Below are positions 20,212 through 60,490 of a DNA stretch of 64,000 nucleotides, one piece after another. The stretch's first letter is position 1, and each line of letters opens with the position of its first letter. A program made the translations under genes and the position numbers. The notes under the pieces are model-generated. The model saw only the letters and a program-made list of their open reading frames with translations. It made no database searches and had not been told where the DNA came from. Location of the stretch: NCBI RefSeq assembly GCF_030028105.1, contig NC_092383.1, forward strand, positions 97,053,604-97,117,603, read 5' to 3'. Source of the stretch: Mobula birostris (Eukaryota).

Positions 20212-20261
20212 GCTCCCATCCAGGCACCGGAGCAGAAGGCAGACTCCACAAGGCTGAATGA
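20212..20261 (+). CDS. Gene 1: probable terminal cytoplasmic exon (16 aa, no Tyr)
   Basis: Strong acceptor ctctcctctgtccccccacag; phase 1 gives SSHPGTGAEGRLHKAE-stop. Confidence 0.6.
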
Positions 20262-38905: not shown

Positions 38906-39185
38906 GTGAACACCGATCATCAAACACCACTTTACAGCAATACCATTTCATTCATCCCATCACCTCCCCCACATTCTACCCCGCACCCTCTCAGTGGGGG
39001 CAATTTATAGTGGCCAATTAACCCACCACCCTTGTATCTTTGGAATCTAGGAGGAAATGGGAGCACCTGGGGTAAACTGAGCCTTCACTGGGAGAACATG
39101 CAAACTCCACACAGATGGAATCTAAAACCAGGTTTAAACTGGGTTTGCTGGAGTTGTGAGACAGCAGAACTTCCTGCTGCCCATC
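38870..39185 (-). mobile_element. SINE with CR1-like tail at the duplication boundary
   Basis: ACAGCACCGAAACCGGCCC... tail and GGGAGAACATGCAAACTCCACACAG body; second copy at 51915-52230. Confidence 0.6.
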
Positions 39186-40479
39186 TGTATGTGTTTTCTC
39201 TCTCACTCCAGTGACAAATGGACTCCAGCACCATTTTCTGTTTCACAGCCTCAACCACTTCCTGCCACCATGTTACAACTTTGCAAGGCTTTCACCAAGG
39301 TCACACACTTCTTGTGTCGCTGAAACCCTTCATTCGTATTCTCTGCCTTGTCGATTAAACTGTTGTGTTTCGATTTCAGTGGCTCTGTTTCATCTGACTG
39401 ACCTGTGCCAGCCTCTCACTGGATCTGGCACAAGGCCACAAACAGTATTAATTTATTGCTCTTGCCCCATGTCACTTCCTTTGTTCAACCCAGTTCATCC
39501 AAATACGCAGCTCAGTCTTCCTCAGGTCACACAGGCTGTTTCTTTGATAAGCCTGTCAGTCCGACAAAATCAAAAACAGCTTTTTATTTGGAAATTATCC
39601 CTTATTTATCAGATTGTCAACCCCACTGCATCTACTGTTTGCTGCTCTGATCAAACTGTCCCCGGGAGGGGAGCCAGCTCACAAAATGGTGGCCGCAGAG
39701 AACACACATAAAATGGCTGCCTCCATTCCTTCCACTACAAGAATATATTTGTTTTTACTGTTTCCCCTGTCCCTGGCTCATTTGGTGTTCTACAGTTTTT
39801 TAATCCCTTCATGACTGACAATCCACAGGGTCAGCATTCAATCCCTTGGGTTGTTGTAGGAAAGCTTCAGACTTCGGAGAAATGAGATTGTTTGGTCAGG
39901 TGGGCAGAGGAAGAGGCAAATGGAGAATAAAATGGAGTTTGTGTTGGATCAGGGTAAATTGACGTTCCTCTATTCGGAGGCTGTGTCCTCTGGTCCTACA
40001 CTCCTTCACCATAAGAAGCATTTTCTTACGTCCTCTGCCGAGGTATTTCAACATTCGATAGGTTTCAATGAAATTTCCACTCATTCTTCCAAATTTCAGT
40101 GAGTACAGGCCCAGAGCCATCAAATGCTCCTCATATGCTCTACAACATGAAATCCTTGGAAGTGAGTCCATAGGTTGTGGAATCAATTCAGGGTTATGGT
40201 GTGTGAAGTTATCCACACTGGTTCAGGAGTCTGATGTGTAACTGTTCCTGAACCTGGTGGTGTGGAACCTGAGGTCCGTACCTCCTTTCTGACAGCAGCA
40301 ATGAAAGGAGATTATGGACTGGATGGTCGGGGTCCTTGATAATGCACGTTGCTTTCTTGTCGCAGTGCTCCTTGTAGATCTGCTCAGTGGTGGGGAGGGT
40401 TTTTCTTGTGATGGACTGGGCCATATCCACCACTTTATGTTGGCTTTTCTATTCTTTTGGTCAGGACTGCGGTGATGTG

Positions 40480-43400
40480 GGCGAGCAGCCGGAAGTCTGG
40501 TACATGTTGGTACCAATGACATAGACAGAAAAAGAGAGGAGGTCCTAAAGAAAGATTACTGGGAGCTAGGAAGAAAATTGAAAAGCCGGACCTCCAGAGT
40601 AATAATATCAGGATTGCTGCCTGAGCTGCGCACTAATGATGGTAAGAATAGCAGAATTAAGCAGATGAATGTGTGGCTAGGTAACTGGTGCAGGGGGCAA
40701 GGCTTCAAATTCTTGAATCATTGGGATCTCGGCCTGAAACGTCGACTGCACCTCTTCCTAGAGATGCTGCCTGGCCTGCTGCGTTCACCAGCAACTTTGA
40801 TGAGTGGTACTAATATCCTGGTGGGATTGTTTAATATAGCTGTTAGGGAGGGTTTAAACTAAGTTAGCAAGGGGAAGGAAACCAAGGTGTTAGGGTGGAG
40901 GAAGAGGGAAATAGAAATAAGTCAAAAATACTGTGCAGCAAAGATCGCAAGAAGGACAGGCCGGTGAATATACAGGATAATTTGCTGCAAAATAGAAATA
41001 TAGCAAAATCGACAACAGATACTGATCTAAGTGTACTGTACTTAAATGCACGCAGCATTAGAAATAAAGTGGATGACCTTGCTGCACAGCTGCAGGTTAA
41101 AAGGTATGACATTGTGGCCATCACCGAGTCATGACTAAATGATGGATGTAATTGGGAGCTGAATATCCCAGGATACACAGTGTACAGGAAGGATAGGAAG
41201 GTAGGTAAAGGCGGTGGCGTGGCCCTGTTGGTAAGTAATGATATCAAATCAATAGAAAGAGGGACATAGGATCAGAAGAGGTAGAATCCTTATCGGTAGA
41301 ATTAAGAAATGGCAAGGGTAAAAAGACACTAATAGCAGTTATATACAGGCCTCCAAACAGCAGTCGGGATGTGGACTACAAGTTGCAGCTGGAAATAGAA
41401 AAAGCGTGTCAGAAGGAAAATGTCAAGATAATTATGGGGGATTTTAATATGAAAGTGGATTGGGAAAGTCGGGAAGGTAATGGATCTCAGGAGAGGGAGT
41501 TTGTAGAATGCCTACAGGATGGCTTTTTGGAGCAGCTTGTCCAGAAGCCCACCAGGGGACCGGCTGTTTTGGATTAGGTGCTGTGTAGTGAATCTGAGGC
41601 GATTAGGGAGCTGGAGGTAAAGGAACTCCTCGGAAGTAGTGATCATAATATGATTGAGTTCAGTTTCAAATTTGAAAAGGAGAAGCTGGTATCAGGTGTA
41701 TCGATATTTCAGTGGAACAGGGGAAATTACAGTGGTATGAGAGAGGAACTGGCCCAAGTCAATTGGAAAAGTAAACTAAATGGAGGGACGGCAGAGCAGA
41801 ATTGGATGAAATTCCTACAAGAAATAAGGAAAATGCAGGAAAAATATATTCCAAGAAAAAAAATTCATGAATGGAAAAATGGCGCAAATGTGGCTAACGA
41901 GAGAGGTTAAGGCAAAAATAAAAGCAAAAGAAACGGCGTACAAGGAAGCAAAAATTAGTGGGAAAATGAGGACTGGAAGACTTTTAAAAGCTTACAGAAG
42001 GAAACTAAGAAAGTCATTAGGAAAGAAAAGATGAATTATGAAAGGAAGTTGGCGATCAACATTAAAAAAAGGATACTAAGTGTTTTTTTAAATATATGAA
42101 GAGTAAAAGAGTGACAAGGGTAGATATGGGACCGATTGAAAATGATGCTGGAGAAATTATAATGGATAACAAAGAGATGGCGGAGGAACTGAATGAGTAT
42201 TTTGCATCAGTCTTCACAGTGAAAGACATGAGCAATATACCTGATAGCCAGAGGTATCAGGGAATAGAATTAGGTACAGTCAAGATAACTAGAGAGAAAG
42301 TGCTTGGGAAGCTAAGTGGACTAAGAATAGATAAGTCTCCCGGCCCGGATGAGGTGCACCCAAGGGTTCTGAAGGAGGTGGCTTTGGAGATTGTGGAAGC
42401 ATTGGAAATGATCTTCCAGGAATCAATAGACTCTGACATTGTTCCAGAGGACTGGAAGGTCGCAAATGTAGTTCCGTTATTTAAGAAAGGAACGAGGCAG
42501 CAAAAAGAAAATTACAGACCTATTAGTCTGACATCGGTAGTTGGAAAGATATTGGAGTCAATCCTCAAGGACGAGGTTATGAAATACCTCGGTGCATGAC
42601 AAGATAGGCCGAAGCCAGCATGGTTTCATGAAGGGAAGATCCTGCCTTACCAACTTATTGGAATTTTTTGAGGTAATCTCGAATAAGATTGACAAGGGAG
42701 AGGCTGTGGATGTTGTGTATTTGGATTTTCAAAAGGCCTTCGATAAGGTGCCGCATATGAGGCTGCTTAATAAGATGAGAGCCCATGGAATTATAGGAAA
42801 GAATTGAAATGGATGGAGCATTGGCTGATAGGCAGAAAGCAAAGGGTGGAAATAAAGGGGTCCTATTCTGATTGGTTGCCGGTTACTAGTGGTGTTCCGC
42901 AGGGGTCGGTGTTGGGGCCGCTTCTTTTTATGATGTATATCGATGATTTGGATTATGGATTAAATGGTTTTGTGGCCAACTTTGCGGATGACACCAAGAT
43001 AGGTGGAGGAGCAGGAAATGTTGAAGAAACGGAAAGGTTGCAGAGAGACTTAGTCAGTTTAGGAGAGTGGGCAAAGAAATGGCAGATGAGATACAAAGTT
43101 GACAAATGTACGGTTGTACATTTCGGAAGAAGAAATAATCTGGCAGATTATTATTTAGATGGGGAGAAAATTCAAAAATCGGAAGTGCAAAGGGACTTGG
43201 GGGTCCTCGTGCAGGATACCCTAAAGGTTAACCACCAAGTTGGATCGGCGGTAAGGAAAGCGAATGCTATGTTGGCGTTCATTTCAAGAGGAATAGTGTG
43301 TAAGAGTAAAGAGGTGTTGATGAGGCTCTATGGGGCATCAGTGAGACCTCATTTGGAATACTGTGTGCAGTTTTGGGCCACCTATCTTAGAAAGGATACA

Positions 43401-43913
43401 TTGATGTTGTAGAGAGATCAGAGAAGATTTACGAGGATGATTCCTGGAATGCAGGGGCTAACATATGAGGAGTGTCTGTCGGCTCTTGGATTGTATTCAT
43501 TAGAGTATAGAAGAATGAGAGGGGATCTCATAGAAACATTTTGAATGTTGAAAGGATTGGACAGAGTACATGTGGAAAGGTTGTTTCCCTTGGTGGGTGA
43601 GTCCAGGACAAGAGGCCATAGTCTTAGAATTAGAGGGTACCCAGTTAAAACAGAGATGAGGAGAAATTTTTTTAGCCAGAGGGTCGTGGATTTGTGGAAT
43701 TCATTGCCACATATGGCTGTGGAGGCCCGATCATTGAGGGTGTTTAAGGAGGAGATTGACAGGTATCTAATTAGTCAGGGTATCAAGGGATATGGGGAAA
43801 AGCTGGAAATTGGAACTAGATGGGTGAATAGTTTAGTTCATGGGGGAGCTGTGGAGCAGACTCGATGGGCTGAATGGCCTACTTCTGCTCCTTTGTCTTG
43901 TGTGATCTTCTGT
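40480..43913 (+). mobile_element. CR1 LINE (end of ORF1 + full ORF2, frameshifted), specific to copy A
   Basis: EN (LYLNARSIRNK) and RT (YLDFQKAFDKVPH, FADDTK); GTGATGTG at 40472-40479 and 43914-43921; empty site GTGATGAG at 53516-53523. Confidence 0.95.
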
Positions 43914-44196
43914 GTGATGTGATAAAAGATCAGTCAGAGTCTCATTGATTGTGGAGCAGGCACGAGGGGTCAAAAATCCTCCTGATTTTATTGTTCTTAT
44001 TTGGTGTGAGGTGAAATACTGACATCAGTCAGTCCGCTCGTGACGTCGAGCGCTGTGGCTTTCTGCTTGTGATCACACCTCTGTACTTCACCTTTTGCAC
44101 AACACCTACTTTCTTGTCGACTGCTCTTCACAACGTACCGAATAGGAGAGGAAGCTTTGTGCAGCCCACCAACGTCTATACTGTTCTGTGAGAACA

Positions 44197-44251
44197 ATGA
44201 ACACCAGGCATCTGCTTATCTCCTGCTGGCTAACTCTCTGTGCCTCACTCT
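44197..44251 (+). CDS. Signal-peptide exon, copy A (non-canonical T|gcaagt donor)
   Basis: MNTRHLLISCWLTLCASL + 1 nt (phase 1). Confidence 0.6.
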
Positions 44252-47200
44252 GCAAGTTTGATTCAGAGCAAGTCTTTGTCTTTAACATTCTTCTCTCCAG
44301 GTTCGCTGTTACTTTCTGGACTCGGGCATTTCTGGGTCCCACACTACCAGGGCAAGGAGAGTGTAGGTCGGACACAGTGAAGCTGCCTCTCCTGTCACAC
44401 TCTCATAAAACACCAGTTTGACATGGAGAGCAAGAAAAGTTTGGTTAATGGTGGGTTTTGGGACAGAGGATTGGCTCTTTCTGTAGCCATAGAACCATCC
44501 TGCTTCTAATTCTGGAAACGGAGCTTGAGAAACAGGTATCAGTTGTTCACAGGATTGGGAAGGATTGGCAGGGATGTGGAATTAAGTACATGTGACCCAG
44601 GACCCCTCAGAACCCAGGGACTGGGATCTGGTCTGGAGATGTTTCATGGGAAAAGATCCTGATGGGGAATCGCTGTAGGAATGGTGGATGGTGGGGGCAG
44701 GAAGTGGCGGGTGTGGGGGGCACTGGAATGGAGAAAGAGAGTGGAAATTGTTAACAGTCATCTTCATTTTTGGTCCCAAGTGCTGGGTTTCTCTCTCTCT
44801 CGGCAGACAGACTGCCGATCTGTCAATAGCCACATCACAATATTGGACATACAAGCATTGAGAGAGAATGATAAATAAAATCCTGATATCATTGCCCAAA
44901 ATGGTTGTTAACCTGTAGAATTAGTCGTAAGTCTGAGGATTGAGACTGATTATGAACACAGCAAAGGGTAACAGATATATCGTTGAAGAAAGCGAAAATG
45001 GAAAGTTGAAGGATATTAAAAACAGACTGTGAGAGCCGGAATCAGGACATGAAACAAACACAGCAGCAGGTACAACTGTAGTTCCCTTACAGACAGACGT
45101 GGGTCTTTGTAATGGGGAATGAAGGAACAGTAGAGGAAATAACCATGGCTTTTTGTGTGTCTTTGTGGAACACACAAAAACCTGCCAGAAATACAGGATA
45201 GACAAGTGTTGAATGCTAGTGTAGAAATAAAATCAATCAGCGTCAATGATGAAATAACATCACGAAAATGGATAATTGACACAGGCCTGATGATCTCCAT
45301 CCCGGAGTCTGTGACAAGGTGTCAGTAGAGTTACTCAACTTTATGGTTATCATCTGGCAAACTCTACAGTTTCAGGAATGGTTCCTACAGACTGTTTCAA
45401 AAAGGAGGGAGAGAGAGAAAACTGGGAACCACACAACTCTCCAGCTGACACTGGGAGCGGGGAGAATGTTGGAATCTGTGATAATGGGTGAGAAATGAAT
45501 GCTGAAGGGGAATTATCACAAAGATTCACCAGACTGGTTTGTGATGTGGTGGGTCTGACATGTCACTAGTGTGGGTAATAGACTAGGTCTCTATTCAAAA
45601 AGTTCAAAATAAGTTTTATTATCAGAGTAGAGATATGTCACCACATACAATCCTGAGATTCTTTCTCTGCGGGCATACTTAGCAAATCTATAGAACAGTA
45701 ACTGTAAATAGGATCAATAGACAACAAACTGCGCAAATAAATATAAATAAATATCAATAAATAACCTGTTCTTGAACCTGATGGTGTAGGTCCTGAGGCT
45801 CTTGTACCTTCTACCTGATGACAGCAGTGAGAAAAGAGCATGGCCTGGGTGGTGAGGATCTTTGATTATGGCAATGTTTCATGTAGATGCTTTCAGTGGG
45901 TGGGAAGGTTTTATCCATGATATACTGGACCGAATTCACTACATTTTGTAGGATTTTCCGTTCAAATACATGGTGTTCCCATACCAGGCCATTACGAAGC
46001 CAGCCGGCATACTGTGGTAAATCACTGGGATTCTCCGGTGATCCGGAAATTCTTCTTTCATTGATAGATTTCTAGATATTAAGGAGATCAAGGAAAATGG
46101 CAAGAAAATGTTTCAGTCAGGATCAGTTGAATATGTTGTCTGGTTCAATGGTCGCACGTCTGCTCCCTGCTCCTGCTCGTCATGTTGACACGAGCTCAGC
46201 AAAGTGTTTGTGAACCCGGATCACACAATGGAACAAAAGAGCAGAGAGTGTGACTGGTTGCATGAGAGTGTGTGTGAGTGTGAGTGTGAGTGTGAGTGTG
46301 TGTGCGTGAGAGTGTGTGTGTTAGTTTCAATCACCATTATCTGTCGTATCTAGAGTTTGATGTGTGTGAAAATCCCAGGAGATCAGCATTGAGTTGCTGC
46401 CACATGATGGCTGATTTGGTATTTGTTAACGGGCAGGTGTCGGGTTGTATTCAATAAAGTGACTATTGAGTGTGATCCAGGCACAGCCCTGCAGTGCATT
46501 CAGTGTCCAGCATCTCAGTGTGGAGAAGCCATCCACAGTGAGACAGAGAGAGATACTGCAGGGAACTCATACCTTCAACCCACCAGGTCAATGCTAACCA
46601 TCAACCACCTGTTTACACTCATACTACATTAACGTGTCTGGTCCAGACGGCGTACCTGGCCGAGTACTAAAGATCTGTGTGGTCCAACTAACAGGAGTAT
46701 TTTGCACTTTCTTCACTGTACAGCCGCACTTGGCTGGGAAATGGGTGAGAACCAGAGAAGCTGCCCCAAACACACTCTGATCCATTTTTTAAAATCTCCC
46801 CGTCTCTATCATATGATACAGGAGGTGGAAGCAGTCAGCAGTTCAGGACACATTTGTAGAATGAGAAAAGAGACAACATTTCAGGTCAAAGACTGTTCAT
46901 TAGAACTGTGGAGAAGTAAAAACTATAGGGAAAGTGGGTGTTGGGGTGTCTCTGACAGGGTGCCATGGGGATAAGCTGGCTACAGGATTATCTGGTCAAT
47001 GGGTGATTGGGAGCAGTTGGAACAGGGAGAACATGGACAAAAGGAGATTGACGACAATGTATAGACGTGAACTATTCAACAGGAAGCCTGGTCCGGTAGG
47101 TCAGGCTAGACACCATCTCCACTACCACATCCAGCTAGATTCTCTTACACTCTTCTTAAGCCAATCACCCCTGGTGGGGCACAGGCTGCTGACAGCAGCT

Positions 47201-48113
47201 CACTAGACACCTCTATCCATCTAAACAGGGAATTCTGACCCTCTCGCACAACAGAAACTGTAGCATTGGACTGTACACCCTCTTTGCTCCAAGGTCTGAT
47301 GAGGAGTGGCAGAGTCCTCACAGACAGACTCTAACTGGGACTCCACCCTCACCACCTGACACTGGAGGTCCAGGCAACAGGTGAGGGTCAGACAGTGCAG
47401 AGTGCACAGGGGCAGCCGGTGCAAGGAACCACCTGGGGACGGGAGGTGCAGCCTGTGGGACATTTCCCAGAGACGGCTCAAGTTGTGCTGAACCAGCTCT
47501 GCAGGAGAGCTTGGGGGACGTAGATCCAGTGACAATTCCGGCTGAGTGGTGGTCACCGTGAGTCCGTTCAGTCGACCTCCTGACCCCTGCACACTCACAG
47601 TGAGGGTATCCCAGTAATCTCACCCCAAACTTCCTAGAAAGTATCCATGAGGTATGTAACATTACACTGAATATAGTGTCCCAGTGAGTGACACAGTACA
47701 TGTACACAACAGCACACTCACACACAGCAATATGGTTGCTGACTCACTCCAACAGTAATATCACATTCACAATAATCTCACTCAGCAGTGTCTGTCTGAG
47801 AAACACTCTCTCCCTGTGTGCCGCGTCCACACAGAGGAAGAACTAAAGACATGGAAATGGAGAGAATTCCTGGAATAAAGAGCTAGAAACAGGAAATGGA
47901 GGAGAGTTTGTCGATGAGTGTGGGTAGTGCACGTGGGAACTTTCTCCAGCAGCAAGTGACTGGTGAGGGAAGGGTTAAACCGTTGGGTAAAATTGAGGTG
48001 GGGTTGGCTTGAAGTTCACTCTGGAGTGTTGGGGATGGGATGGGGGAGTTGGGGATTGAGGTGTCCACAAGGATCTTCATTATTCATCTTTCATCTCTCC
48101 CTCACACCCTCAG

Positions 48114-48394
48114 AGCCCGTGTCAGGAGCAAACATCACAGTTCAGAACATCACTGGGACTTGTAACCTCACCCTGACTGCTCCGTGACCTCTGGCAACCC
48201 CACCAGATTCAGTTGGAAGAGAGAAGTTACAGGAGACAACAGCAGCCATCACATCTGGAAAGACGGAAAGATGATACAGGTTCATTGCACAGCAGAGATC
48301 GAGGATGTTGTGTACAGGTGTGAGGCCAGCAACCCCATCAGTGAGGACACCGCACAGGTCCGGCTGGGGGACGTCTGTAATCTGGACACATGTC
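48114..48394 (+). pseudogene. Third IgC2 paralogue with a 1-nt deletion
   Basis: Intact splice sites (ccctcag, C|gtgagt); CTGACTGC versus CTGACCTGC in gene 1 shifts frame just before the second Cys; otherwise open and collinear. Confidence 0.88.
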
Positions 48395-50879
48395 GTGAGT
48401 GTCAGAGGAAGAAGTTGGGATTTAGTTATCTCCCCGTCCCAGAAGTGTGAGATGGGACAGCACAGAGGAGCTTCAGTTTGTATCTATTCTGCACTCTGAC
48501 ACTGTTTGAGAGAATACTGTAGAGAACCATTTACTTTATCGGCAACCTTCATTTTTTGTATTTTATACTCAGGCCTCTGCTCATATTTGTCAGCACAGAC
48601 TGGGTGAGGAACTGCAGTACATTTTGCAGAAGGTCCACACTGAATCAACTGTGCACTGTTACTGGAGGGAGGGAGTGATTCGATTGGAGGGAAGGATTAT
48701 TTAGGATAGCTGAGGCACTGAGTGGTCAGGGAGGTGGAGGCTGAGTTTGAGGAGAGGGGTTACTGAGGGCCAGTGTGAGGGAGCTGGATTAAAATCAGAG
48801 GAAATACAATCCATGACACATGTGCTGGGGAAGAGGGTTTACTGAGAGTTTTCTTTTTGACAGAATTGGACTAATATTTCTGGAGATCTGGTCTATGATA
48901 CAGGACCCTTGCTGTGAGTGATTTCAGAGGGAGAATGTGAGAGTTAGATTAACCAGTGAGTCCATAGACACGAAGCCTGGAGCAGGTGAATCAGGACATT
49001 AACTCAGCCTCAGTTCATCACACAATGGGGAAAATCGTTGCGACGTTTGCAGACACGAAGCCCGGAGCAGCCGGATCAGGACACTGACTCAGCCTCAGTT
49101 CTGCGGGGAACGGGGCAAATCTCACAGAGCAGTAATGGACAGTGTCAGGGAGTCGGATCAACATCATCAGAGATACAGACAGGGACAAAGACACGAGGGG
49201 AGAGGGGCTGCAGAGGGATAGTGTGAGGGAACAGGATTAACATCAGTGGAGAAACAGTCAGTGGCACTGGAGACTGAGGAAGAGGGGTTTCTGAGGAACT
49301 AGGTAAGGGAGATTGAATGACATCACTGGACATACATTTAGTGACTCCGGGAGTTTGTGGAGAGGAGGGATGAAGGGAAAACGTGAGGAACTCAGTCAGT
49401 ATCAGTGGGTACATTCAGTGATACACGGTGATGGGGAAGAGGGGTTCCTGGTGACAGTGTCAGGAAGCAGTGTCACCGCGGTTCCGATATGGCCCAAGTG
49501 CGGAGTGAGAGACACTGAAGCAGGTCGATAGTTCAGACTTTCATCCAAACAAGGGGAAATAAAAGAATAAGTGCTAGGCCAAAGAGAGTCGTTAACTAAA
49601 ACTCTCGAAAGGGAAACGAAGCCTACACAGTGGCTGAAAAGAATATCTAAACATTAAACGAATACCGTTAGTCTTCAGAGTCAGTTGGAACAGGTGGACA
49701 AAGTTACTTCGAACTCAACGGCTGTGAAGGCGGATGAAGGCTGCAACAAATCCATCAGCTCCAATCGTCGTGGTTTCCATGCCATTGGAATCAGTTGGTT
49801 GATTTGCGAAGTATCGTGTGCTTCTTGGAGTGCAACATCAAGTACACGTTAAACAAATACACGCACAGGAGTCTTCACTCTGTACGGAACGAAGACCATC
49901 ATCCTCGACCTCGAGGGATAGCCACGACGAGAATCAGTTGATTTTGAAAGTCCAATGGCTCAGGGAAGGCCGAATGCAAAACTGCAGCGAAGCTTTGCTA
50001 TGCTCTGTCCAAGTCTCGACAAGCACGACGACGACAAGAATGTAGTTAAATACTATCACGATTAAATAATAATTACCTGACACGTGCAAATTCACAAGCG
50101 CGATTGCCGTATCTACTGTACTGCCGAATCTGTGGTTGTGACAAGCAGGGGTAATATCAGACACAAAACAATCACAAGACCATAAGACCATAAGATATAG
50201 GAGCAGAAGTAGGCCATTCGACCCTTCGATCCCGCTCCACCATTCAATCATGGGCTGATCCAATTCTTCTAGTCATCCCCACTCCCCTGCTTTCACCGCA
50301 CACCTTTGATGCCCTGGCTAATCAAGAACCTCCCTATCTCTCCCTTAAATACACCCTTGGCCTTCACAGCCGCTCGTGGCAACACATTCCACAGATTTAC
50401 CACCCTCTGACTAAAGTAATTTCTCCACAACTCAGTTCTAAAATGACGTCCTTCAATCCTGAAGTCAGTGAGAAAGAACTGGATGGACATGAGCGGAGTT
50501 GCAGTCACTGGCACAGGCACTGAGAAAGAGGGGCTATCGAGGGAATAGATGAGGGAAATGATTAACAGCAGTGGACAGAGTCTGTGTTACAGGGAACTGA
50601 AGATGTGTAAGGCGTTACTGAGGGACTGGATGAGGGAGAGGATAACAGCTTTAGAGAACAGATTTAATTAATGCCATCTTTTCTTTCCTCGCTGTTTAAG
50701 GCCACAGGGTCTCTGTATTTCTGGGAGATTTTTTGTACCTTTGTTTGAGAAGGTGGGCAACTTCAGTTTTGGTTCCTCTACCATTTCCTTAATTCCTGTC
50801 ACAAACATTTCCAAATATGTCTGTCAACTGTATTCTTCTTCTGTGTACCAGTGGGGGCACCACAGTGTAGAAGGGTGGT

Positions 50880-51400
50880 GGAGAGCAGTGATGTGATAGT
50901 GACTAGGGGATGAGGGGACTGAGGGGTATTGGAGGGGAGAGGAGAGGTGCAGGACAGTGATGTGATGGTGATTAGAGGGAATGGGGAGCAAGAAGATTGA
51001 GGGGTATTAGAGGGGTCAGTGCAGGACAGTGATGTGATGGAGATTGGAGGGAATATAGATGGAAGGACTGAGGGGTATTGGAGTGGAGGAGAAGGGAGGG
51101 GAGTGATTTGATAGCGATTGGAGGGAATGGGGACCGAGGGGACTGATGGGTATTATAGGGGAGCAGAACAAGACAGTGATGTTATGGAGATTGGAGGGAC
51201 TGAGGGGAATTGGAAGGGAGGAGAAGAGAGGGGAGTGATTTGATAGTGATCGGAGGGAATGGGGATGGAGAGAAGTATTGGAGGGGAGCGATGCAGGACC
51301 AAGATATGATGGAGATTGGAGGGAATAGGGGTGGAGGGACTGAGGGATGTTGGAAGGGAGAGGAGCGGAGTGGAGAGGTGGAGTTTGGATGGTAGTTACG
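50880..51400. repeat. Degenerate purine-rich minisatellite
   Basis: Recurrent CAGGACAGTGATGTGATGGAGATTGGAGGGAAT...GGACTGAGGGGTATTGGAG units. Confidence 0.75.
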
Positions 51401-51550: not shown

Positions 51551-51700
51551 CCCCTAAAGCAACAGCAGCGGGAGATGCAGTGACCTGGGTGATCAGATTG
51601 TTCGTGGTGAGGACCCTCCTGATCTTTGCCCTCACTGTGATCCTCACGGACACACGGAAGAGAGGACCTGAGGGAAGGGAAGTAACTTCAGGGACTGAAG
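51551..51700 (+). CDS. TM exon with intramembrane Arg; GC-AG intron follows
   Basis: Acceptor tttctcctctctgttacag; 150 nt, phase 1-1: xPKATAAGDAVTWVIRLFVVRTLLIFALTVILTDTRKRGPEGREVTSGTE; donor AAG|gcaagt. Confidence 0.75.
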
Positions 51701-51864
51701 GCAAGTGGATCTGACACCCTGTCATTGAGGCTGGTATTTGGGAGAGGGAGAGAGAGAGCGGGTGGGCAGGGAGGTGACAACTGGGATGGGAGAGAGGGGT
51801 TAGATGGGGTAAAGTGGAAATAGTTTCAGTACAGACGCTGTCACCTCTGCTTTCTGTCCTACAG

Positions 51865-51923
51865 ACCCACTGGAGACAGGTATCATTTACACAGATCTTC
51901 AGAAGAATCGCAGCGTCAAATAG
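51865..51923 (+). CDS. Terminal cytoplasmic exon with ITIM (IIYTDL)
   Basis: Acceptor tttctgtcctacag; phase 1: DPLETGIIYTDLQKNRSVK-stop; fits I/V/L/S-x-Y-x-x-L/V. Confidence 0.75.
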
Positions 51924-53798
51924 CACCGAAACCGGCCCTTTGATCCATGAGTGAACACCGATCATCAAACACCACTTTACAGCAATACCATTTCATTCAT
52001 CCCATCACCTCCCCCACATTCTACCCCGCACCCTCTCAGTGGGGGCAATTTATAGTGGTCAATTAACCCACCACCCTTGTATCTTTGGAATCTGGGAGGA
52101 AATGGGAGCACCTGGGGTAAACTGAGCCTTCACTGGGAGAACATGCAAACTCCATACAGATGGAATCTAAAACCAGGTTTAAACTGCGTTTGCTGAAGTT
52201 GTGAGACAGCAGAACTTCCTGCTGCCCACCTGTATGTGTTTTCTCTCTCACTCCAGAGACAACTGGACTCCAGCACCATTTTCTGTTTCACAGCCTCAAC
52301 CACTTCCTGCCACCATGTTACAACTTTGCAAGACTTTCACCAAGGTCACACACTTCTTGTGTCGCTGAAACCCTTCATTCGTATTCTCTGCCTTGTCGAT
52401 TAAACTGTTGTGTTTTGATTTCAGTGGCTCTGTTTCATCTGACTGACCTGTGCCAGCCTCTCACTGGATCTGGCACAAGGCCACAAACAGTATTAATTTA
52501 TTGCTCTTGCCCCATGTCACTTCCTTTGTTCAACCCAGTTCATCCAAATACGCAGCTCAGTCTTCCTCAGGTCACACAGGCTGTTTCTTTGATAAGCCTG
52601 TCAGTCCGACAAAATCAAAAACAGCTTTTTATTTGGAAATTATCCCTTATTTATCAGATTGTCAACCCCACTGCATCTACTTTTTGCTGCTCTGATCAAA
52701 CCGTCCCCGGGGAGGAGCCAGCTCACAAAATGGTGGCCGCAGCGAAGACACATAAACTGGCTGCCTCCATTCCTTCCACTACAAGAATATATTTGTTTTT
52801 ACTGCTTCCCCTGTCCCTGGCTCATTTGGTGTTCTAAAGTTTTTTAATCCCTTCATGACTGACAATCCACAGGGCCAGCATTCAATCCCTTGGGTTGTTG
52901 TAGGAAAGCTTCAGACTTCGGAGAGATGAGATTGTTTCGTCAGGTGGGCAGAGGAAGAGGCAAATGGAGAATAAAATGGAGTTTGTGTTGGATCAGGGTA
53001 AATGGGCGTTCCTCTGTTTGGAGGCTGTGTCCTCTGGTCCTACACTCCTTCACCATAAGAAGTGTCCTCTTACGTCCTCTGTCGCGGTATTTCAACATTC
53101 GATAGGTTTCAATGAAATTTCCACTCATTCTTCCAAATTTCAGTGAGTACAGGCCCAGAGCCATCAAATGCTCCTCATATGCTCTACAACATGAAATCCT
53201 TGAAAGTGAGTCCATAGGTTGTGGAATCAATTCAGAGTGGCGGTGTGTGAAGTTATCCACGCTGGTTCAGGAGTCTGATGTGTAACTGTTCCTGAACCTG
53301 GTGGTGTGGAACCTGAGGTCCGTACCTCCTTTCTGACAGCAGCAATGAAAGGAGATTATGGACTGGATGGTTGGGGTCCTTGATGATGCACGTTGCTTTC
53401 TTGTCGCAGTGCTCCTTGTAGATCTGCTCAGTGGTGGGGAGGGTTTTTCTTGTGATGGACTGGGCCATATCCACCACTTTATGTTGGCTTTTCTGTTCTT
53501 TTGGTCAGGACTGCGGTGATGAGATAAAAGATCAGTCAGAGTCTCATTGATTGTGGAGCAGGAACAAGGGGCCAAAAATCCTTCTGATTTTATTGTTCTT
53601 ATTTGGTGTGAGGTGAAATACTGACATCAGTCAGTCCGCTCGTGACATCGAGCGCTGTGGCTTTCTGCTTGTGATCACACCTCTGTACTTCACCTTTTGC
53701 ACAACACCTACTTTCTTGTCGACTGCTCTTCACAACGTACCGAATAGGAGAGGAAGCTTTGTGCAGCCCACCAACGTCTATACTGTTCTGTGAGAACA

Positions 53799-53853
53799 AT
53801 GAACACCAGGCATCTGCTGATCACCTGCTGGCTAACTCTCTGTGCTTCACTCT
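53799..53853 (+). CDS. Signal-peptide exon, copy B (canonical T|gtaagt donor)
   Basis: MNTRHLLITCWLTLCASL + 1 nt (phase 1), ACAATG start. Confidence 0.7.
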
Positions 53854-55416
53854 GTAAGTTTGATTCAGAGCAAGTCTTTGTCTTTAACATCCTTCTCTCC
53901 AGGTTCGCTGTTACTTTCTGGACTTGGGCATCTCTGGGTCCCACACTACCAGGGCATGGAGAGTGTAGATTGGACGCAGTGAAGCTGCCTCTCCTGTCAC
54001 ACTCTCATAAAACACGAGTTTGACATAGAGAGCAAGAAATGTTTGGTTACTGGTGGGTATTGGGACAGAGGATTGGATTTTTCTGTAGCCACAGAACCAT
54101 CTTGCTTCTAATTCTGGAAACGGAGCTTGAGAAACAGGTATCAGTTGTTCACAGGATTGGGAAGGATTGGCAGGGATGTGGAATTGAGTACATGTGACCC
54201 AGGATCCCTTAGAACCCAGGAACTGGGATCTGGTCTGGAGATGTTTCATGGGAAAAGATCCTGATGGGGAATCGCTGTAGGAATGGTGGATGGTGGGGGC
54301 AGGAAGTGGTGGGTGTGGGGGGCACTGGAATGGAGAAAGAGAGTAGAAATTGTTAACAGTCATCTCCCTTTTTGGCACCCAAGTGCTGGTTTTCACTCTC
54401 TCTCGGCAGACAGACTGTCGATCTGTCAATAACTCAAATCACAATAATGGACATACAAACATTGAGAGAGAATGATAAAGAAAATCCTGATATCATTGCC
54501 GGAAACGGTTGTTAACCTGCAGAATTAGTCATAAGCCTGAGGATTGAGATTGATTACGAACACAGCAAAGGGTAACAGATAAATCACTGAAGAAAGTGAA
54601 AATGGAAAGTTGAAGGATATTAAAAACAGACTGTGAGAGCCGGAATCAGGACATGAAACAAACACAGCAGCAGGTACAACTGTAGTTCCCTTACAGACAG
54701 ACGTGGGTCTTTGTAATGGGGAATGAAGGAACTGTAGAGGAAATAACCATGGCTTTTTGTGTGTCTTTGTGGAACACACAAAAACCTGCCAGAAGTACAG
54801 GATAGACAAGTGTTGAATGCTAGTGTAGAAATAAAATCAATTCAGCGTCAATGATGAAATAACATCATGAAAATGGATAATTGACACAGGCCTGATGATC
54901 TCCATCCCGGAGTCTGTGGCAAGGTGTCAGTAGAGTTACTCAACTTCCTGGTTATCATCTGGCAAACTCTACAGTTTCAGGAATGGTTCCTACAGACTGT
55001 TTCAAAAAGGAGGGAGAGAGAGAAAACTGGGAACCACACATCTCCCCAGCTGACACTGAGAGCGGGGACAATGTTGGAATCTGTGATAATGGGTGAGAAA
55101 TGGAAGCTGAAGGGGAATTATCACAAAGATTCACCAGACTGGTTTGTGATGTGGTGGGTCTGACATGTCACTAGTGTGGGTAATAGACTAGGTCTTTATT
55201 CAAAAAGTTCAAAATAAGTTTTATCAGAGTAGAGATATGTCACCACATACAACCCTGAGATTCTTTCTCTGTGGGCATACTTAGCAAATCTATAGAACAG
55301 TAACTGTAAACAGGATCAATAGACAACGAACTGTGAAAATGCAAATATAAATAAATATCAATAAATAACCTGTTCTTGAACCTGGTGGTGTAGGTCCTGA
55401 GGCACTTGTACCTTCT

Positions 55417-58239
55417 GTTAAAGCTTTTTTTTATGGAAAAAAGAAAGAAAGAATAAAAGAACTCCTACTATCTAAAACAGGAAAAAAACCCTAATAACAA
55501 AAAAACGGGAAAAAAAAACATTTGGAGCACAATCCCGGAACTGTACGCCATACAAGCCTCCATTAAAAAAATGACATCAATCTGCCAACCAAATCCATAT
55601 ACCCAAGCATCAGAAAAGGACCATCTTTATTAACTCAAATCAAATGATAATAACAGGCAAAAGAACCCCACCTTTTCTCGAAATCAAATCTAGGATCAAA
55701 AGTTCGACTTCTAATTTTCTCCAAACTAAGACATAACATCACCTGAGAGAACCATTGTATCAAAGTGGGAGCAGAGGCATCTTTCCATTTTAATAAAATA
55801 GCCCTTCTGGCCAATAATGTGACAAATGCAATTAGGTGTTGGTCTGATATAGAAATACTGTGCATATGTTGAGGAATTATACCAAACAAAACTGTCAATT
55901 TATTAGGTTGTAAATTGATTTTTAAAGCTTTAGAAATTGTAGAAAAAATAGATTTCCAAAATTGTTTCAATACAGAACACGACCAGAACTTATGTGTTAA
56001 TGTAGCTATCTCAGTTTTGCATCTATCATACTGACTATTTACATTAGGAAATATTTTAGACGATCTCTCCTTTGTCAAATAATAACGATGTACAACTTTA
56101 AATTGAATGAGAAAATGACTGGCACAAATCGAGGAAGAGTTAAACAGCTTCAAAATTCGCAACCAATCCTCTGTTATCAAGGTCATGTTAAGCTCTCTTT
56201 CCCAATCTTGCTTAATCTTAAGTAAAGGATAGTTATCCTGTTGTAATAGTAAATTATAAATTTTCCCAATAAAACCTTTCACTAAAGGGTTCATTTTTAA
56301 AATAATGTCTAACAGGTCAGAGTCTTGTATATATGGAAAATTACTTAAATATCTTGTAAGAAATGTCTGCCCTGAAGATACTGCAAAAAATGTGAATATG
56401 AGAGAGAGTATTTAGTCACTAATTTCTCAAAGGACATCAATTGACCTTCTTGAAACAAATCCATAAAGGAAAAAATTCCTTTATTCCTCCAAAGAGAAAA
56501 GGTAGGATCACTAAGTGAAGGTTTAAATAAATAGTTTCGATAAATTAAACTAAAAAGGTTAAACTTTTGAAGATTAAAAAACTTACGAAACTGGTACCAG
56601 ATTCGTAATGATTGATTAATCATAGGATTTATATTTAGAATAGACATTTTGGCTAATTGTACAGGTAAAGGAGCTCCTAATAACAAAGTTACATGAAATT
56701 GTTTCACAATTTTCAATTCCAAATCAACCCAAGATGGTCGTTCCTTTTTTTCGGTCCAATATAACCAAGAACACGCATAACATATATTAACCGTCCAATA
56801 ATACATTCTTAAATTAGGCGAAGTAAGACCTCCATCCTTTTTTAATTTTTGTAAATAACATTTTCCAATTCTTGGTCTTTTATTATTCCAAACAAAAGAT
56901 GAAATAATAGGGTCAACCTGATCAAAAAACTTCTTAGTTAGAAAAATAGGAATATATTGAAATACATATAAAAATTTTGGTAAAATCATCGTTTTAATTG
57001 CATGAATTCCACCTGCTAACGAAAGTGTAAGTGGATTCCATCTTGAAAAAAATTGCTTCATAAAATCCACCAAGGGAACTAAATTAGCTCTATAAAGGTC
57101 TCCATAATTCTTAGTGATGATAATACCTAAATATTTAAAAGAATCCGTAACTTTTAGAGGAATGTCATCATAGATAGAAGCAGAATCATTTAAAGGAAAT
57201 AATTCACTTTTATGCAGGTTTAATTTATATCCTGAAAACAATCCAAATTCATTTAATAGTTTCAATAAACTAGGAATAGATTCTTCGGGATTCGAAACAT
57301 AAACCAAAAGATCATCCGCATAAAGAGAGATCTTATGAATAGTGTCATTTATAGAAATTCCTTGAATATTTTTAGCTTCACGAAGTGCAATACCCAAGGG
57401 TTCCAACATCAAATTAAATAACACAGGGCTTAACGGACATCCTTGTCTCGTACCCTGGGAAAGTTGGAAAAAGGGGGATCTACAGTTATTAATAATAACA
57501 GTGGCAATAGGGTTTTTATATATCAATCTAATCCATTTATTAAAATTAGTACCAAAGCTAAATTTCTCTAAAACTTTAAATAGATATTTCCATTCAACTC
57601 TATCAAATGCCCTTTCAGCATCTAGAGAAACAACACATTGGGGAGTCTTAGAGAGGGATGAGTATATAATATTTAACAATCTCCGAGTGTTAGATAAAGA
57701 ATAACGGCCTTTGTTAAAACCTGTTTGATCCTGAGAAATAATTTTAGCTAGTATATTCTCCATCTGATTAGCCATTATTTTTGAAAGAATTTTGGCATCC
57801 ACATTTAATAATGAAATAGGTCTATATGAAGCACAATCAGTGGGGTCTTTATCTTTCTTACGAATTAAAGAAATAGAAGCTTCATAAGATGTGGAAGGTA
57901 ACTCTCCAAGCAGAAAAGAATCTTTAAGCATTTCCACAATATAAGGAGTAGGCAAATCTTGAAATGTTTTAATAAAATCCTACCGTAAAACCATCCAATC
58001 CAGGAGCTTTACCAGATTGCATTGAAAGAATAGCTTTCTGAATTTCTCTTTCAGTAAAAGGAACATCAAGAATTTACTGATCTTCAACAGATATTCTAGG
58101 AAAATCAGTCTTTTGTAAAAAGGTATACATATTAGAAGGGTCAGCTGGAAACTGAGATTTATAGAGTTCACTGTAATAGTCTTGAAAAATTTTATTAATA
58201 TTATTAATTTAGTTATTTATAAATTAATTTAATTTTTAT
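55417..58239 (-). mobile_element. 5'-truncated L1-clade LINE, specific to copy B
   Basis: RT ORF 56345-57955 (YRPISLLNVD, SLDAERAFDRV, QGCPLSP, YADDLL) and Cys-containing C-terminus 55635-56294; TSD TTGTACCTTCT at 55406-55416 and 58240-58250; empty site near 45802. Confidence 0.95.
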
Positions 58240-60490
58240 TTGTACCTTCTACCTGATGACAGCAGTGAGAAAAGAGCATGGCCTGGGTGGTGAGGATCTT
58301 TGATTATGGCAATGTTTCATGTAGAAGCTTTCAGTGGCTGGGAAGGTTTTATCCATGATGTACTGGACCGAATTCACTACCTTTTGTAGGATTTTCTGTT
58401 CAAATACATGGTGTTCCCATACCAGGTCATTACGAAGCCAGCCGGCATACTGTGGTAAATCACTGGGATTCTCTGGTGACCTGGAAATTCTTCTTTCATT
58501 GATAGATTTCTAGATATTAAGGAGATCAAGGAAAATGGCAAGAAAATGTTTTAGTCAGGAGCAGTTGAATATGTTGTGTGGTTCAATAGTGGCACGTCCG
58601 CTTCCTGCTCCTGCTCGTCATGTTGACACGAGCTCAGCAAAGTGTTTGTGAAACCGGATCACAAAGTGTAACAACAGAGCAGAGAGTGTGAGTGTTTGCA
58701 AGTGAGTGTGTCTGCGTCTCTGTGTCTGTGTGTGTGCACATGTGCGCATTTGTGTGTGCGTCTGTACGTGTGTGAGTGTGCACATGTGTGTAAGCATGCA
58801 CAATTGTCTGTGTGTGTGTGTTTCTGTGTGTCAGTTTGTGTGTGTTTCTGTGTCTGGGTGTGTGTGTGCGAGAGAGAGAAAGAACATGTATCACACAATG
58901 GGAAACTTGAGTAAGGTGTATGTGTCAGAGCTATGGGTTGTTTTTAAAGAAGAAAGGGATTTTATCAGTTTGTATGTGGATTGTATTTTCTCAGTGTCAC
59001 CTCACGGGTATGTAGTGTTCCGTCAATTGTGAACTTTTCGTGTCTAACGGTTTGTCTTTGAACAAAGTGTGTTTTCGCTTTGTGTTCAGTGTCTCATTTG
59101 GGGTCACAGGGATTGTTAATTTCTCTTTGTATTGATCACTTTTATTCAATTTGGGTTGACGTGCTTTCTTGGTCACTGTGTGAGTTGGAGAGACCAGGAG
59201 ACTATGCTGTTGATAAGGATGTCTGCTTTAAATCTGTCAACCATCTCTACAGTAGCTGTTTTGATCAGGACAAGGTTGTCTACACACACACACTTCCTTG
59301 GGTCACCAACGAGTTCTTCTGTCTTGATTATGTTGAGGTCTATGTTGTTCTGACACCATGACAAAAGCATCATGATCACTTTCCTGCAGAGTGAACTCTC
59401 ACATATGATCTTCAGAAGTTTGTTCAGATTTAGACAAATTCAGTTTGTACTCCTCCTGGTTATCGAGACCCCTCTCCCCTTTCTTGTTGCTCCTCTTCAA
59501 CCTTCCAGATTTCCCAGCATTGCGGTCCTCCTCCCAACAAAGTTTTATCGAATTTAAACTCAGTCTACCTCCCTCGTGATTGGATTCAGTGGAATTCTGA
59601 TCACAGTCTGCTCCAGTGGAACAGTGCTCTCCTTCTCCAGTACTAATGCCAGTGCCACAGGAGCTGAAAGCCACACCAGGCTCTGAGTCACTCCTCCCTG
59701 ATCCCACTAATTGCGTTATGATGTGTTTGTGGGTGGGTAATAATACAAAGATTAAGACATTTATGGAGAAGTAAAAACTATAGGAAAAGTGGGTGTGGGG
59801 GTGTCTCTGACAGGGTGCCATGGGGATAAGCTGGCTACAAGATTATCTGGTCAATGGGTGATTGGGAGCAGTTGGAACAAGGAGAACATGGACAAAAGGA
59901 GATTGACGACAATGTATAGACGTGAACTATTCAACAGGAAGCCTGGTCCGGTAGGTCAGGCTAGACACCATCTCCACTACCACATCCAGCTAGATTCTCT
60001 TACACTCTTCTTAAGCCAATCACCCCTGGTGGGGCACAGGCTGCTGACAGCAGCTCACTAGACACCTCTATCCATCTAAACAGGGAATTCTGACCCTCTC
60101 GGACAACAGAAACTGTAGCATTGGACTGTTCACCCTCTTTGCTCCAAGGTCTGATGAGGAGTGGCAGAGTCCTCATAGACAGACTCTAACTGGGACTCCA
60201 CCCTCACCACCTGACACTGGAGGTCCAGGCAACAGGTGAGGGTCGGACAGTGCAGAGTGTACAGGAGCAGCCGGTGCAAGGATCCCCTGGGGACGGGAGG
60301 TGCAGCCTGTGGGACATTTCCCAGAGACGGCTCAAGTTGTGCTGAACCAGCTCTGGAGGAGAGCTTGGGGGACCCAAATCCAGGGACAATTCCGGCTGAG
60401 TGGTGGTCACCGTGAGTCCAATCAGTCGACTTCCTGACCCCAGCACACTCACAGTGAGGGTATCACAGTATCTCACCCCAAACTTCCTAG

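What the first reader, a model, noticed from the sequence alone, without database searches (positions are those of the whole stretch)
51551..51923. One receptor carrying both an FcR-gamma-type Arg TM and an ITIM, joined by a GC-AG intron
Seen: TM VTWVIRLFVVRTLLIFALTVIL, then a 164-nt intron with a consensus-strong GC donor (AAG|gcaagt), then an exon encoding IIYTDL; both exons are phase-compatible and open. Known: an Arg near the outer TM end (NLIRM in Fc-alpha-RI, similar in LILRA, GPVI, OSCAR) recruits FcR-gamma, and dual Arg+ITIM receptors are uncommon (KIR2DL4, chicken CHIR-AB). Inference: a bifunctional receptor. Retention of the GC intron could remove the ITIM and act as a switch.
Basis: partly seen in the sequence, partly recalled or inferred. 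Interest (0 to 1): 0.75.

Follow-up and report, generated by a model that had tools for sequence, protein, structure and literature searches.

The report
Broken manta-ray SLAM-like receptor copy
The two exons are real and do pair an arginine-bearing membrane anchor with an inhibitory motif, but they belong to a broken copy of a manta-ray SLAM/CD2-family immune-receptor gene, so this is most likely gene decay, not a working two-way receptor.

Summary
The TM exon is 51551-51700, followed by an AAG|GCAAGT donor, a 164-nt intron and a tail exon 51865-51923 encoding IIYTDL. The TM in fact carries two Arg (R-x4-R). Both exons are homologous to exons of RefSeq-predicted SLAM/CD2-family genes of Mobula birostris, M. 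hypostoma and Hypanus sabinus. In the long-tailed sisters the same junction (SGTE|D..ETGIIYTDL) is used.

The gene that owns these exons is broken as assembled:
- Its leader donor is GC, where its 97% twin has GT.
- It has no V exon.
- Its C2 exon has a 1-nt deletion that removes the first Ig cysteine and gives a stop.
- Its tail stops right after the ITIM, and no ITSM-coding sequence is left.
- No predicted protein matches it.

Among 66 TM-bearing relatives, the 7 with a charged TM core all lack tail tyrosine motifs. Two of them have inhibitory partners with 98-100% identical ectodomains, which is a paired-receptor pattern. As modelled, no relative combines Arg with an ITIM.

Five sister models in two Mobula species and one in Hypanus end in the retained-intron reading (GKWI*, or GEWI/GKSI/SKWM).

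The parts
44197..44251 (+). Leader exon of the gene that owns the finding ('gene C'): MNTRHLLISCWLTLCASL. Its donor is T|GCAAGT, with GC at 44252-3.
   Evidence: It is 100% identical to the leader of P0010. The 97% twin copy at 53799-53853 has T|GTAAGT.
44252..48113 (+). Intron-like stretch where the V-domain exon should lie. No V exon is present.
   Evidence: tblastn with six sister V domains gave nothing better than E=0.04 over 22 residues. The only V exon in the window is 10548-10889, which belongs to gene A.
48114..48394 (+). C2-type Ig exon, 85-95% identical to sisters. It is 281 nt long: a 1-nt deletion between 48176 and 48177 removes the first Ig Cys from the frame and gives TGA at 48185-7.
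   Evidence: tblastn needs two frames that meet at 48178.
51551..51700 (+). Stalk, TM and juxtamembrane exon. The TM is AVTWVIRLFVVRTLLIFALTVIL with two Arg, followed by TDTRKRGPEGREVTSGTE.
   Evidence: It is 82% identical to P0008 and 76% to P0013, which has the same VIRLFVVRTLLI.
51682..51683 (+). Competing GT donor 19 nt upstream of the GC donor (GAA|GTAACT). Its use would shift the tail exon into a tyrosine-free frame (THWRQVSFTQIFRRIAASNSTETGPLIHE*).
   Evidence: Sequence and the ORF 51778-51951. The lead came from note s1-146059. None of the 13 close sister models examined uses it.
51701..51864 (+). 164-nt intron with a GCAAGT donor and a ...tcctacag acceptor. If it is retained, the reading frame ends GKWI then TGA at 51712-4.
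   Evidence: The C-termini GKWI (P0008, P0079), GEWI (P0004, P0013), GKSI (P0005) and SKWM (P0001) of sister models are this read-through.
51865..51923 (+). Tail exon DPLETGIIYTDLQKNRSVK*. The ITIM is at 51882-51899. There is a 9-nt in-frame deletion relative to sisters (DLQ[WR][MV][QK]KN). The stop TAG is at 51921-3.
   Evidence: Sisters continue RSVWQPPKGNDRF...TEYAAV. The 97% twin has CAG at 38876-8.
51915..60490 (+). Copy B of a 93-97% identical duplicated block whose twin is 38870-47637. It starts 6 nt before the stop codon of the tail exon and carries the next gene's leader exon (53799-53853). It holds no ITSM-coding sequence.

Best explanation
The finding lies in the 3' end of a dead copy ('gene C', about 44.2-51.9 kb) of a tandemly duplicated SLAM/CD2-family receptor gene of the giant manta ray.

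The family behaves like classical paired immune receptors. Some members have an uncharged TM and a tail spliced from SGTE to an ITIM (IIYTDL) and an ITSM (TEYAAV). Other members have nearly identical ectodomains, a TM carrying Arg, Lys or Glu, and no tail tyrosine.

Gene C carries the charged-type TM (VIRLFVVRTLLI, identical in that core to RefSeq XP_072133766). Downstream it still has an open, splice-competent ITIM exon. This makes it a hybrid or intermediate state, produced by duplication or gene conversion and caught in decay.

Shown:
- exon homology and the conserved junction;
- the gene defects: no V exon, C2 frameshift and stop, GC leader donor against GT in the twin, and a tail truncated with the ITSM lost;
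- the absence of any matching predicted protein.

Inferred:
- the locus makes no functional receptor;
- the Arg+ITIM combination here is a by-product rather than a designed dual-signalling device.

If the locus were transcribed, three endings are possible. The GC splice gives a 19-aa ITIM tail. Intron retention gives GKWI*. The GT donor 19 nt upstream gives a tyrosine-free tail.
For: - Homology of the TM exon: the only hit in 1.84 billion representatives is a Hypanus SLAM-like protein. There are 76 relatives in rays and sharks.
- Alignments of the TM and tail to sisters.
- Gene anatomy and defects.
- The duplication boundary and the twin's CAG and GT.
- No downstream QPPKGNDRF/TEYAAV coding sequence anywhere in the window.
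- No window-encoded protein was flagged among the hits, and the closest TM exon is only 82% identical.
- Paired pattern: P0005 (Arg TM, short) and P0080 (ITIM+ITSM) have 100% identical ectodomains. P0079 (Arg and Lys TM) and P0010/P0078 are 98% identical.
- Tail motifs: 0 of 7 charged-TM relatives have a tail Tyr motif, against 31 of 59 uncharged ones. Fisher p is about 0.012, indicative only because the proteins are related.
- Three charged-TM relatives (P0049, P0055, P0068, from three species) have long spliced tails with no tyrosine at all.
- GC-AG junctions make up about 0.8% of junctions in human and mouse protein-coding genes (PMC7242645). Two GC donors in one five-exon gene, one of them GT in the 97% twin, fits relaxed constraint.
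Against: - No reads could be laid. Neither the transcription state of the locus nor the reality of the 1-nt deletion was checked against raw data.
- The tail exon is no more diverged than the TM exon, and its splice sites are intact. A recently functional Arg+ITIM ancestor therefore cannot be excluded.
- Two unverified first-reader notes on sister genes (s1-146059, s1-146334) report the same GC donor with a GT 19 nt upstream. The TM/tail GC donor may thus be a conserved, working family feature rather than decay.
- Some RefSeq 'short' models may be read-through artefacts of a non-GT donor. P0004 is modelled short, while the very similar P0007 is modelled long. If so, the Arg-TM sisters P0013, P0005 and P0079 might really carry ITIM tails.
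Confidence: 0.75

Rival explanations
1. Functional dual receptor. The locus, or an intact allele of it, expresses a SLAM-like receptor whose Arg TM recruits an ITAM adaptor while its ITIM recruits SHP phosphatases. This would resemble KIR2DL4 or chicken CHIR-AB1.
For: - The TM and ITIM exons are open and phase-compatible.
- The splice signals are good.
- The ITIM is identical to the sisters' IIYTDL.
- The tail exon is not more diverged than the TM exon.
Against: - There is no V exon.
- The C2 exon has a frameshift and stop.
- The leader donor is GC against GT in the twin.
- No predicted protein matches.
- No relative combines a charged TM with a tyrosine motif.
Confidence: 0.06
2. Dead copy of a purely activating-type gene. 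The ancestor already ended at GKWI* through non-use of the GC donor. On this view the ITIM exon is an unused relic that has stayed open only because it is short (57 nt) and the duplication is recent.
For: - All four annotated close sisters with a charged TM (P0005, P0008, P0013, P0079) are modelled with the 4-codon read-through ending.
- The part of the tail after RSV is already degenerate in both 97% twins.
- The tail exon has lost 9 nt.
Against: - Short endings may be annotation artefacts of a GC donor. P0004 is short and P0007 is long for near-identical TM exons.
- Notes s1-146059 and s1-146334 suggest the GC donor is conserved in ITSM-bearing sisters.
- The donor is otherwise a perfect consensus.
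Confidence: 0.3
3. Regulated three-way ending as a family-level switch. Choice among the GC donor, intron retention and the GT donor 19 nt upstream would set ITIM-bearing against ITIM-less tails in living sister genes. Gene C would merely preserve the architecture.
For: - A GT lies at 51682-3, exactly 19 nt upstream, and the tyrosine-free alternative frame is open.
- Six sister models end in the retained-intron reading, and six models of five long-form genes use the splice.
- GC-AG introns are reported as weaker and more prone to alternative splicing (PMC7242645).
Against: - None of the 13 close sister models examined uses the GT-19 donor.
- No isoform pair, short plus long, from one gene was found in the clusters.
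- There is no RNA evidence here.
Confidence: 0.12

Closest known systems
SLAM/CD2 family receptors (SLAMF1-9, CD244, CD48), as computer-annotated in rays: XP_072133767, XP_072133766, XP_072135115 and XP_072133947 (Mobula birostris) and XP_062922453/4 (M. hypostoma)
   Same: - The C2 exon is 85-95% identical and the TM exon 65-82% identical.
- The leader (MNTRHLLISCWLTLCASL) is the same.
- The exon phases are the same.
- The SGTE|D..IIYTDL junction is the same.
   Different: - This copy lacks the V exon, has a frameshifted C2 exon and has lost the ITSM.
- To my knowledge, mammalian SLAM-family members have no charged TM residue and signal through ITSMs, not ITIM-only tails.
KIR2DL4 and chicken CHIR-AB1 (dual receptors: Arg in the TM with FcR-gamma association, plus an ITIM). 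This rests on my own knowledge.
   Same: On paper, this locus also has a basic residue in the outer third of the TM and one ITIM in a short tail.
   Different: - Those are intact, expressed genes with proven adaptor binding.
- Here the gene is broken, there are two Arg (R-x4-R), and nothing was tested.
- The ectodomain family is different.
Classical paired receptors (KIR2DS/2DL, LILRA/B, PIR-A/B, SIRP-alpha/beta; PMC3533184)
   Same: - The family shows partners with 98-100% identical ectodomains.
- One partner has a charged TM and a tyrosine-free tail. The other has ITIM+ITSM.
   Different: - The fold is SLAM/CD2 rather than KIR/LILR.
- No adaptor partner has been identified in rays.
- Some 'short' tails rest on RefSeq models that may be read-through artefacts.
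TCR-alpha/delta transmembrane helix (Arg and Lys five residues apart). This rests on my own knowledge.
   Same: The two basic residues have the same i, i+5 spacing, at a similar depth: positions 7 and 12 of the 23-residue hydrophobic stretch.
   Different: - There is no other sequence similarity.
- TCR chains have almost no cytoplasmic tail.
- The resemblance may be coincidental. In sisters the second position is Gly, Glu or Arg.

Membership tests
CD2/SLAM family | N-terminal V-set domain without the canonical disulphide, followed by a C2-set domain | tested here: not met
   C2 exon homology is clear, at 85-95% to sisters (Pfam ig/Ig_3 weak). However, no V exon lies between the leader and the C2 exon, and the C2 exon is frameshifted. 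The locus is a family member by descent but not an intact one.
CD2/SLAM family | Cytoplasmic ITSM (TxYxxV/I) | tested here: not met
   No TxYxx[VI] is in the tail. No TEYAAV-like coding sequence exists anywhere in the window. Sisters have TEYAAV.
ITIM-bearing inhibitory receptors | (I/V/L/S)xYxx(I/V/L) in the cytoplasmic tail | tested here: met
   IIYTDL at 51882-51899 is identical to the motif in P0003, P0010, P0011 and P0080.
ITIM-bearing inhibitory receptors | Tyrosine phosphorylation and SHP-1/2 recruitment | not testable with these tools
   This needs biochemistry.
Adaptor-coupled (FcR-gamma, DAP12 or CD3-zeta type) activating receptors | Basic residue inside the TM helix | tested here: met
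   Arg sits at positions 7 and 12 of the 23-residue hydrophobic stretch AVTWVIRLFVVRTLLIFALTVIL. Mean Kyte-Doolittle hydropathy is 2.2.
Adaptor-coupled (FcR-gamma, DAP12 or CD3-zeta type) activating receptors | Physical association with an Asp-bearing ITAM adaptor | not testable with these tools
   No ray adaptor was examined. Which adaptor, if any, would pair with it is unknown.
Dual Arg-TM plus ITIM receptors (KIR2DL4, CHIR-AB1 type) | Both features on one expressed, intact polypeptide with a ligand-binding ectodomain | tested here: not met
   The open reading frame of the gene is interrupted and the V domain is missing. No matching predicted protein exists. Expression could not be tested.
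GC-AG introns | GC donor with an otherwise strong consensus, and an AG acceptor | tested here: met
   The donor is AAG|GCAAGT and the acceptor is a pyrimidine tract plus CAG|A.
GC-AG introns | Junction seen in RNA | not testable with these tools
The homologous junction is used in RefSeq long-form models of sisters, but their donor dinucleotide could not be read because no DNA was returned.
Paired activating/inhibitory receptor families | Partners with near-identical ectodomains but opposite TM and tail types | tested here: met
   This holds at family level, not for this locus. P0005 and P0080 are 100% identical, and P0079 and P0010 are 98% identical. Of 7 charged-TM relatives, none has a tail tyrosine motif.

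The most novel reading that the evidence does not exclude
In living sister genes of this ray SLAM-like cluster, the TM-to-tail junction may be a conserved weak GC donor flanked by a GT donor 19 nt upstream. Choice among the GC splice, intron retention and the GT splice would then put an ITIM(+ITSM) tail, a 4-residue stub or a tyrosine-free tail on receptors whose TM can carry Arg. That would be a single-gene activating/inhibitory switch, and some members would be true Arg+ITIM dual receptors. The locus studied here would be a fossil of that design.
Probability: 0.1. Interest if true: 0.65.

Novelty: new member of a known kind. Interest (0 to 1): 0.25.

Why it matters
For this locus the significance is small. 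It is one more decaying copy in a large, already computer-annotated SLAM/CD2-like cluster of the manta ray, and it should not be counted as a dual-signalling receptor.

The surrounding family is more interesting. It shows a paired-receptor organisation: ectodomains 98-100% identical, with a charged TM and no tyrosine in one partner and ITIM+ITSM in the other. I did not find this described for the SLAM/CD2 fold in open papers, although the search was limited. Broken copies such as this one show how TM and tail modules get recombined between the two types.

If the GC donor proves conserved and alternatively used in the intact sisters, the family would offer a simple model for how splicing sets receptor polarity in an early-branching vertebrate.

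Tried and rejected
Splicing, expression and the 1-nt deletion remain unverified against reads.
- Genomic DNA of sister genes, to read their donor dinucleotide and look for relic ITIM exons: the look-up of encoding contigs returned gene tables but no DNA for P0001, P0013, P0005 and P0079, because the files were too large. The Gly or Ser codon that spans the donor is silent for T versus C, so the protein sequences cannot settle it.
- Search for short ORF fragments or transcripts with the 78-aa TM ORF: nothing was found.
- Region search with the P0013 TM and tail found only P0013, P0005 and P0004. No further Arg-TM relatives appeared.
- Rfam: no RNA family in the window.
- An idea that the stretch after the stop (VNTDHQTPLYSNT...) is a decayed ITSM: dropped. 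Sister isoforms P0007 and P0077 indicate an exon boundary after GNDR, so colinearity is not expected. Only the weak APK/PPK match in another frame hints at homology just after RSV.
- Reading the TM GC donor as a decay mutation: softened. Two notes on sister genes report the same GC donor and the GT 19 nt upstream, and I confirmed that GT here.
- Literature searches found no paper on charged-TM SLAM-family receptors in cartilaginous fish. This is not proof that none exists.

Full report
**1. Observation**

- Exon 51551-51700, frame +3, encodes PKATAAGDAVTWVIRLFVVRTLLIFALTVILTDTRKRGPEGREVTSGTE.
- The donor is GAAG|GCAAGT, the intron is 164 nt (51701-51864), and the acceptor is ...ctttctgtcctacag|AC.
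- The phase-1 join gives DPLETGIIYTDLQKNRSVK then TAG (51921-3).

Two refinements apply.
- The hydrophobic stretch holds two Arg, five residues apart (VIRLFVVRTLL), not one.
- If the intron is not removed, the frame ends after four codons, GKWI then TGA at 51712-4.

**2. What the exons belong to**

The window is vertebrate DNA full of LINE and SINE copies. Earlier notes of the scan name the giant manta ray. This was confirmed here: gene A of the window encodes RefSeq 'SLAM family member 5-like [Mobula birostris]' (P0026) essentially exactly, with 100% identity over the V, C2, TM and last-exon coding segments. Its exons are V 10548-10889, C2 15956-16237, TM 17383-17490 and last exon 20214-20258.

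A HMMER search of the 49-residue TM exon against 1.84 billion representatives gave one hit. It is a 276-aa 'SLAM family member 8-like' protein of the stingray Hypanus sabinus, 65% identical over the whole exon. A word-index search seeded with that protein gave 76 relatives in rays, skates and sharks.

Local alignment of the spliced 68-residue peptide to these relatives shows that both exons are family exons.
- The TM exon is 82% identical to P0008 and 76% to P0013 and P0005.
- The tail exon aligns to DQAETGIIYTDLQ[WR][MV][QK]KN[RH]SV of P0003, P0007, P0010, P0011 and P0080.

In those long-form models the junction is the same SGTE|D. The tail then continues WQPPKGNDRF...NPTEYAAVM, that is an ITIM followed by an ITSM.

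**3. Anatomy of the gene that owns the exons ('gene C')**

tblastn with sisters and inspection of splice sites give the following.
- Leader exon 44197-44251 (MNTRHLLISCWLTLCASL).
- No V exon in the 3.9 kb up to the C2 exon. One search gave nothing better than E=0.04 over 22 residues.
- C2 exon 48114-48394.
- TM exon 51551-51700.
- Tail exon 51865-51923.

The gene carries several defects.
- (a) The leader donor is T|GCAAGT. The 97% identical twin leader at 53799-53853 has T|GTAAGT.
- (b) The V exon is missing. Colinearity with the twin block ends at 47637/60490, which fits a deletion.
- (c) The C2 exon is 281 nt. One C is missing between 48176 and 48177 relative to gene A and to all sisters (LTLTCSVTSG). 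This takes the first Ig cysteine out of frame and gives TGA at 48185-7.
- (d) The tail exon lacks 9 nt relative to sisters and stops right after RSVK. The stop TAG is CAG in the twin at 38876-8.
- (e) No sequence encoding QPPKGNDRF or TEYAAV exists in the 1.9 kb before the next leader, or anywhere in the window.

No predicted protein corresponds to this copy. A second decayed C2 exon, with stops, lies at 28.6-29.0 kb ('gene B').

A note on a neighbouring stretch (s1-145345) reached the same kind of verdict for another copy of this array. Its follow-up read that copy as a damaged family member whose intact sisters are already predicted.

**4. The family pattern**

The close sisters fall into two kinds.

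Long forms:

| Protein | Species | TM | Tail |
|---|---|---|---|
| P0007, P0077 | M. birostris | core uncharged | ITIM only |
| P0010, P0078 | M. birostris | core uncharged; Lys at the outer boundary | ITIM + ITSM |
| P0011 | M. birostris | core uncharged | ITIM + ITSM |
| P0080 | M. hypostoma | core uncharged; Lys at the outer boundary | ITIM + ITSM |
| P0003 | Hypanus | core uncharged | ITIM + ITSM |

Short forms end in the retained-intron reading:

| Protein | TM core | C-terminal reading |
|---|---|---|
| P0013 | VIRLFVVRTLLI (same two Arg as here) | GEWI |
| P0079 | VIRLFKMGTLLI | GKWI |
| P0005 | VIRLFVVGTLLI | GKSI |
| P0008 | VLSVVETLLI (Glu) | GKWI |
| P0004 | uncharged | GEWI |
| P0001 | uncharged | SKWM |

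Ectodomains of P0005 and P0080 are 100% identical, and those of P0079 and P0010/P0078 are 98% identical. By the locus tables they are separate genes. That is the signature of paired receptors.

Among 66 relatives with a TM, seven have Arg, Lys or Glu in the TM core, and none of these has any tail tyrosine motif. Of the 59 others, 31 have one. Fisher p is about 0.012, indicative only because the proteins are related.

Three of the seven (P0049, P0055, P0068, from three species) have long spliced tails that are homologous to the ITIM/ITSM tail but contain no tyrosine. For these, the association does not depend on the short models.

**5. Reading**

Gene C carries the charged-type TM but still has an open ITIM exon behind it. 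As modelled, no living relative shows that combination, and gene C itself is broken in at least four places. The most economical reading is a duplicated or converted hybrid copy in decay.

The TM exon looks mosaic. Its N-terminal part resembles P0008 and P0011, and its RLFVVR core resembles P0013.

GC-AG junctions are about 0.8% of junctions in mammalian coding genes (PMC7242645). Two GC donors in one small gene, one of them GT in the 97% twin, fits relaxed constraint.

**6.

Two unverified notes on sister genes (s1-146059, s1-146334) report the same GC donor with a GT donor 19 nt upstream, and a 165-letter stretch holding the GC-AG intron. I confirmed that a GT lies exactly 19 nt upstream here (51682-3). 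Its use would put the tail exon in an open, tyrosine-free frame.

If the GC donor is conserved, then it works in the long-form sisters. Some RefSeq short models may then be read-through artefacts. P0004 is modelled short while the very similar P0007 is modelled long.

I could not read the sisters' DNA. It therefore remains open whether Arg-TM sisters really lack ITIM tails, and whether intron retention is a regulated switch.

**7. Comparison with known systems**

The locus works, on paper, like KIR2DL4 or CHIR-AB1, which combine a basic TM with one ITIM (own knowledge). It fails the membership test of being an intact, expressed polypeptide.

The FcR-gamma assignment rests only on the position of the first Arg. 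The R-x4-R spacing equally recalls the Arg/Lys pair of TCR-alpha (own knowledge).

By descent the locus is a SLAM/CD2-family member, but an incomplete one: no V domain, a broken C2 domain and no ITSM.

**8. Verdict**

The exons, the motif and the retention logic are real. A functional bifunctional receptor at this locus is not supported.
- Novelty is low for the locus: a new, dead member of an annotated family.
- The paired organisation of this SLAM-like family, and the possibly conserved GC/GT donor pair, deserve a test on the intact sisters.

Noticed in passing
window 10548-20258 (+): Gene A is an intact SLAM-like gene that matches RefSeq 'SLAM family member 5-like' (P0026, 270 aa). Its exons are V 10548-10889, C2 15956-16237, TM 17383-17490 and last exon 20214-20258. 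The TM module is of a third type: CRLR before the helix, a His near the inner end and a 16-aa tyrosine-free tail. It is shared by about ten relatives in six ray and skate species.
   Followed up: partly
window 28580-29030 (+): A second decayed C2-type exon ('gene B') has in-frame stops and an internal deletion. No V, TM or tail exons were recognised near it. An assembly gap (N run 31115-31753) lies just downstream.
   Followed up: partly
window 38870-47637 and 51915-60490: The two blocks are 93-97% identical, interrupted by different LINE insertions. Each carries a leader exon (44197 and 53799). Block B starts 6 nt before the stop codon of the tail exon. Block A is preceded by unrelated sequence instead of an ITIM exon.
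   Followed up: partly
window 38783-38869 (+): A signal-peptide-like open frame, MKLLVFFNVSVCCSLSCLVRSLTSSAVHG, lies directly upstream of the start of duplicated block A. It has no similarity to the family leader. Its meaning is unknown.
   Followed up: no
window 61573-61791 (+): A retroelement-type ORF (…DVSVVEFMLEPTPEALDD…MRKAQMQMIIAQHYIDKGTFDEEALELF…) is 87-88% identical to the N-termini of RefSeq models P0008 and P0013. Those two models therefore start in a retroelement-like ORF and lack a signal peptide. Their 5' ends look like annotation artefacts, or the genes are themselves damaged.
   Followed up: partly
window 50868-51392 (+): A G-rich block of internally repeated units (67-75% identical copies spaced about 90-350 nt apart) sits in the intron just upstream of the TM exon.
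   Followed up: no
proteins P0013, P0005 and P0079 (not in the window): The three annotated Arg-TM sisters are all modelled with a 9-residue insert (REKPL[LF]LSV) between C2 and TM. It is made by a donor 4 nt downstream and an acceptor 23 nt upstream of the usual sites. The same alternative sites exist in the window (48399 GT; AG before 51528). I could not tell whether this is RNA-supported or a modelling choice.
   Followed up: partly
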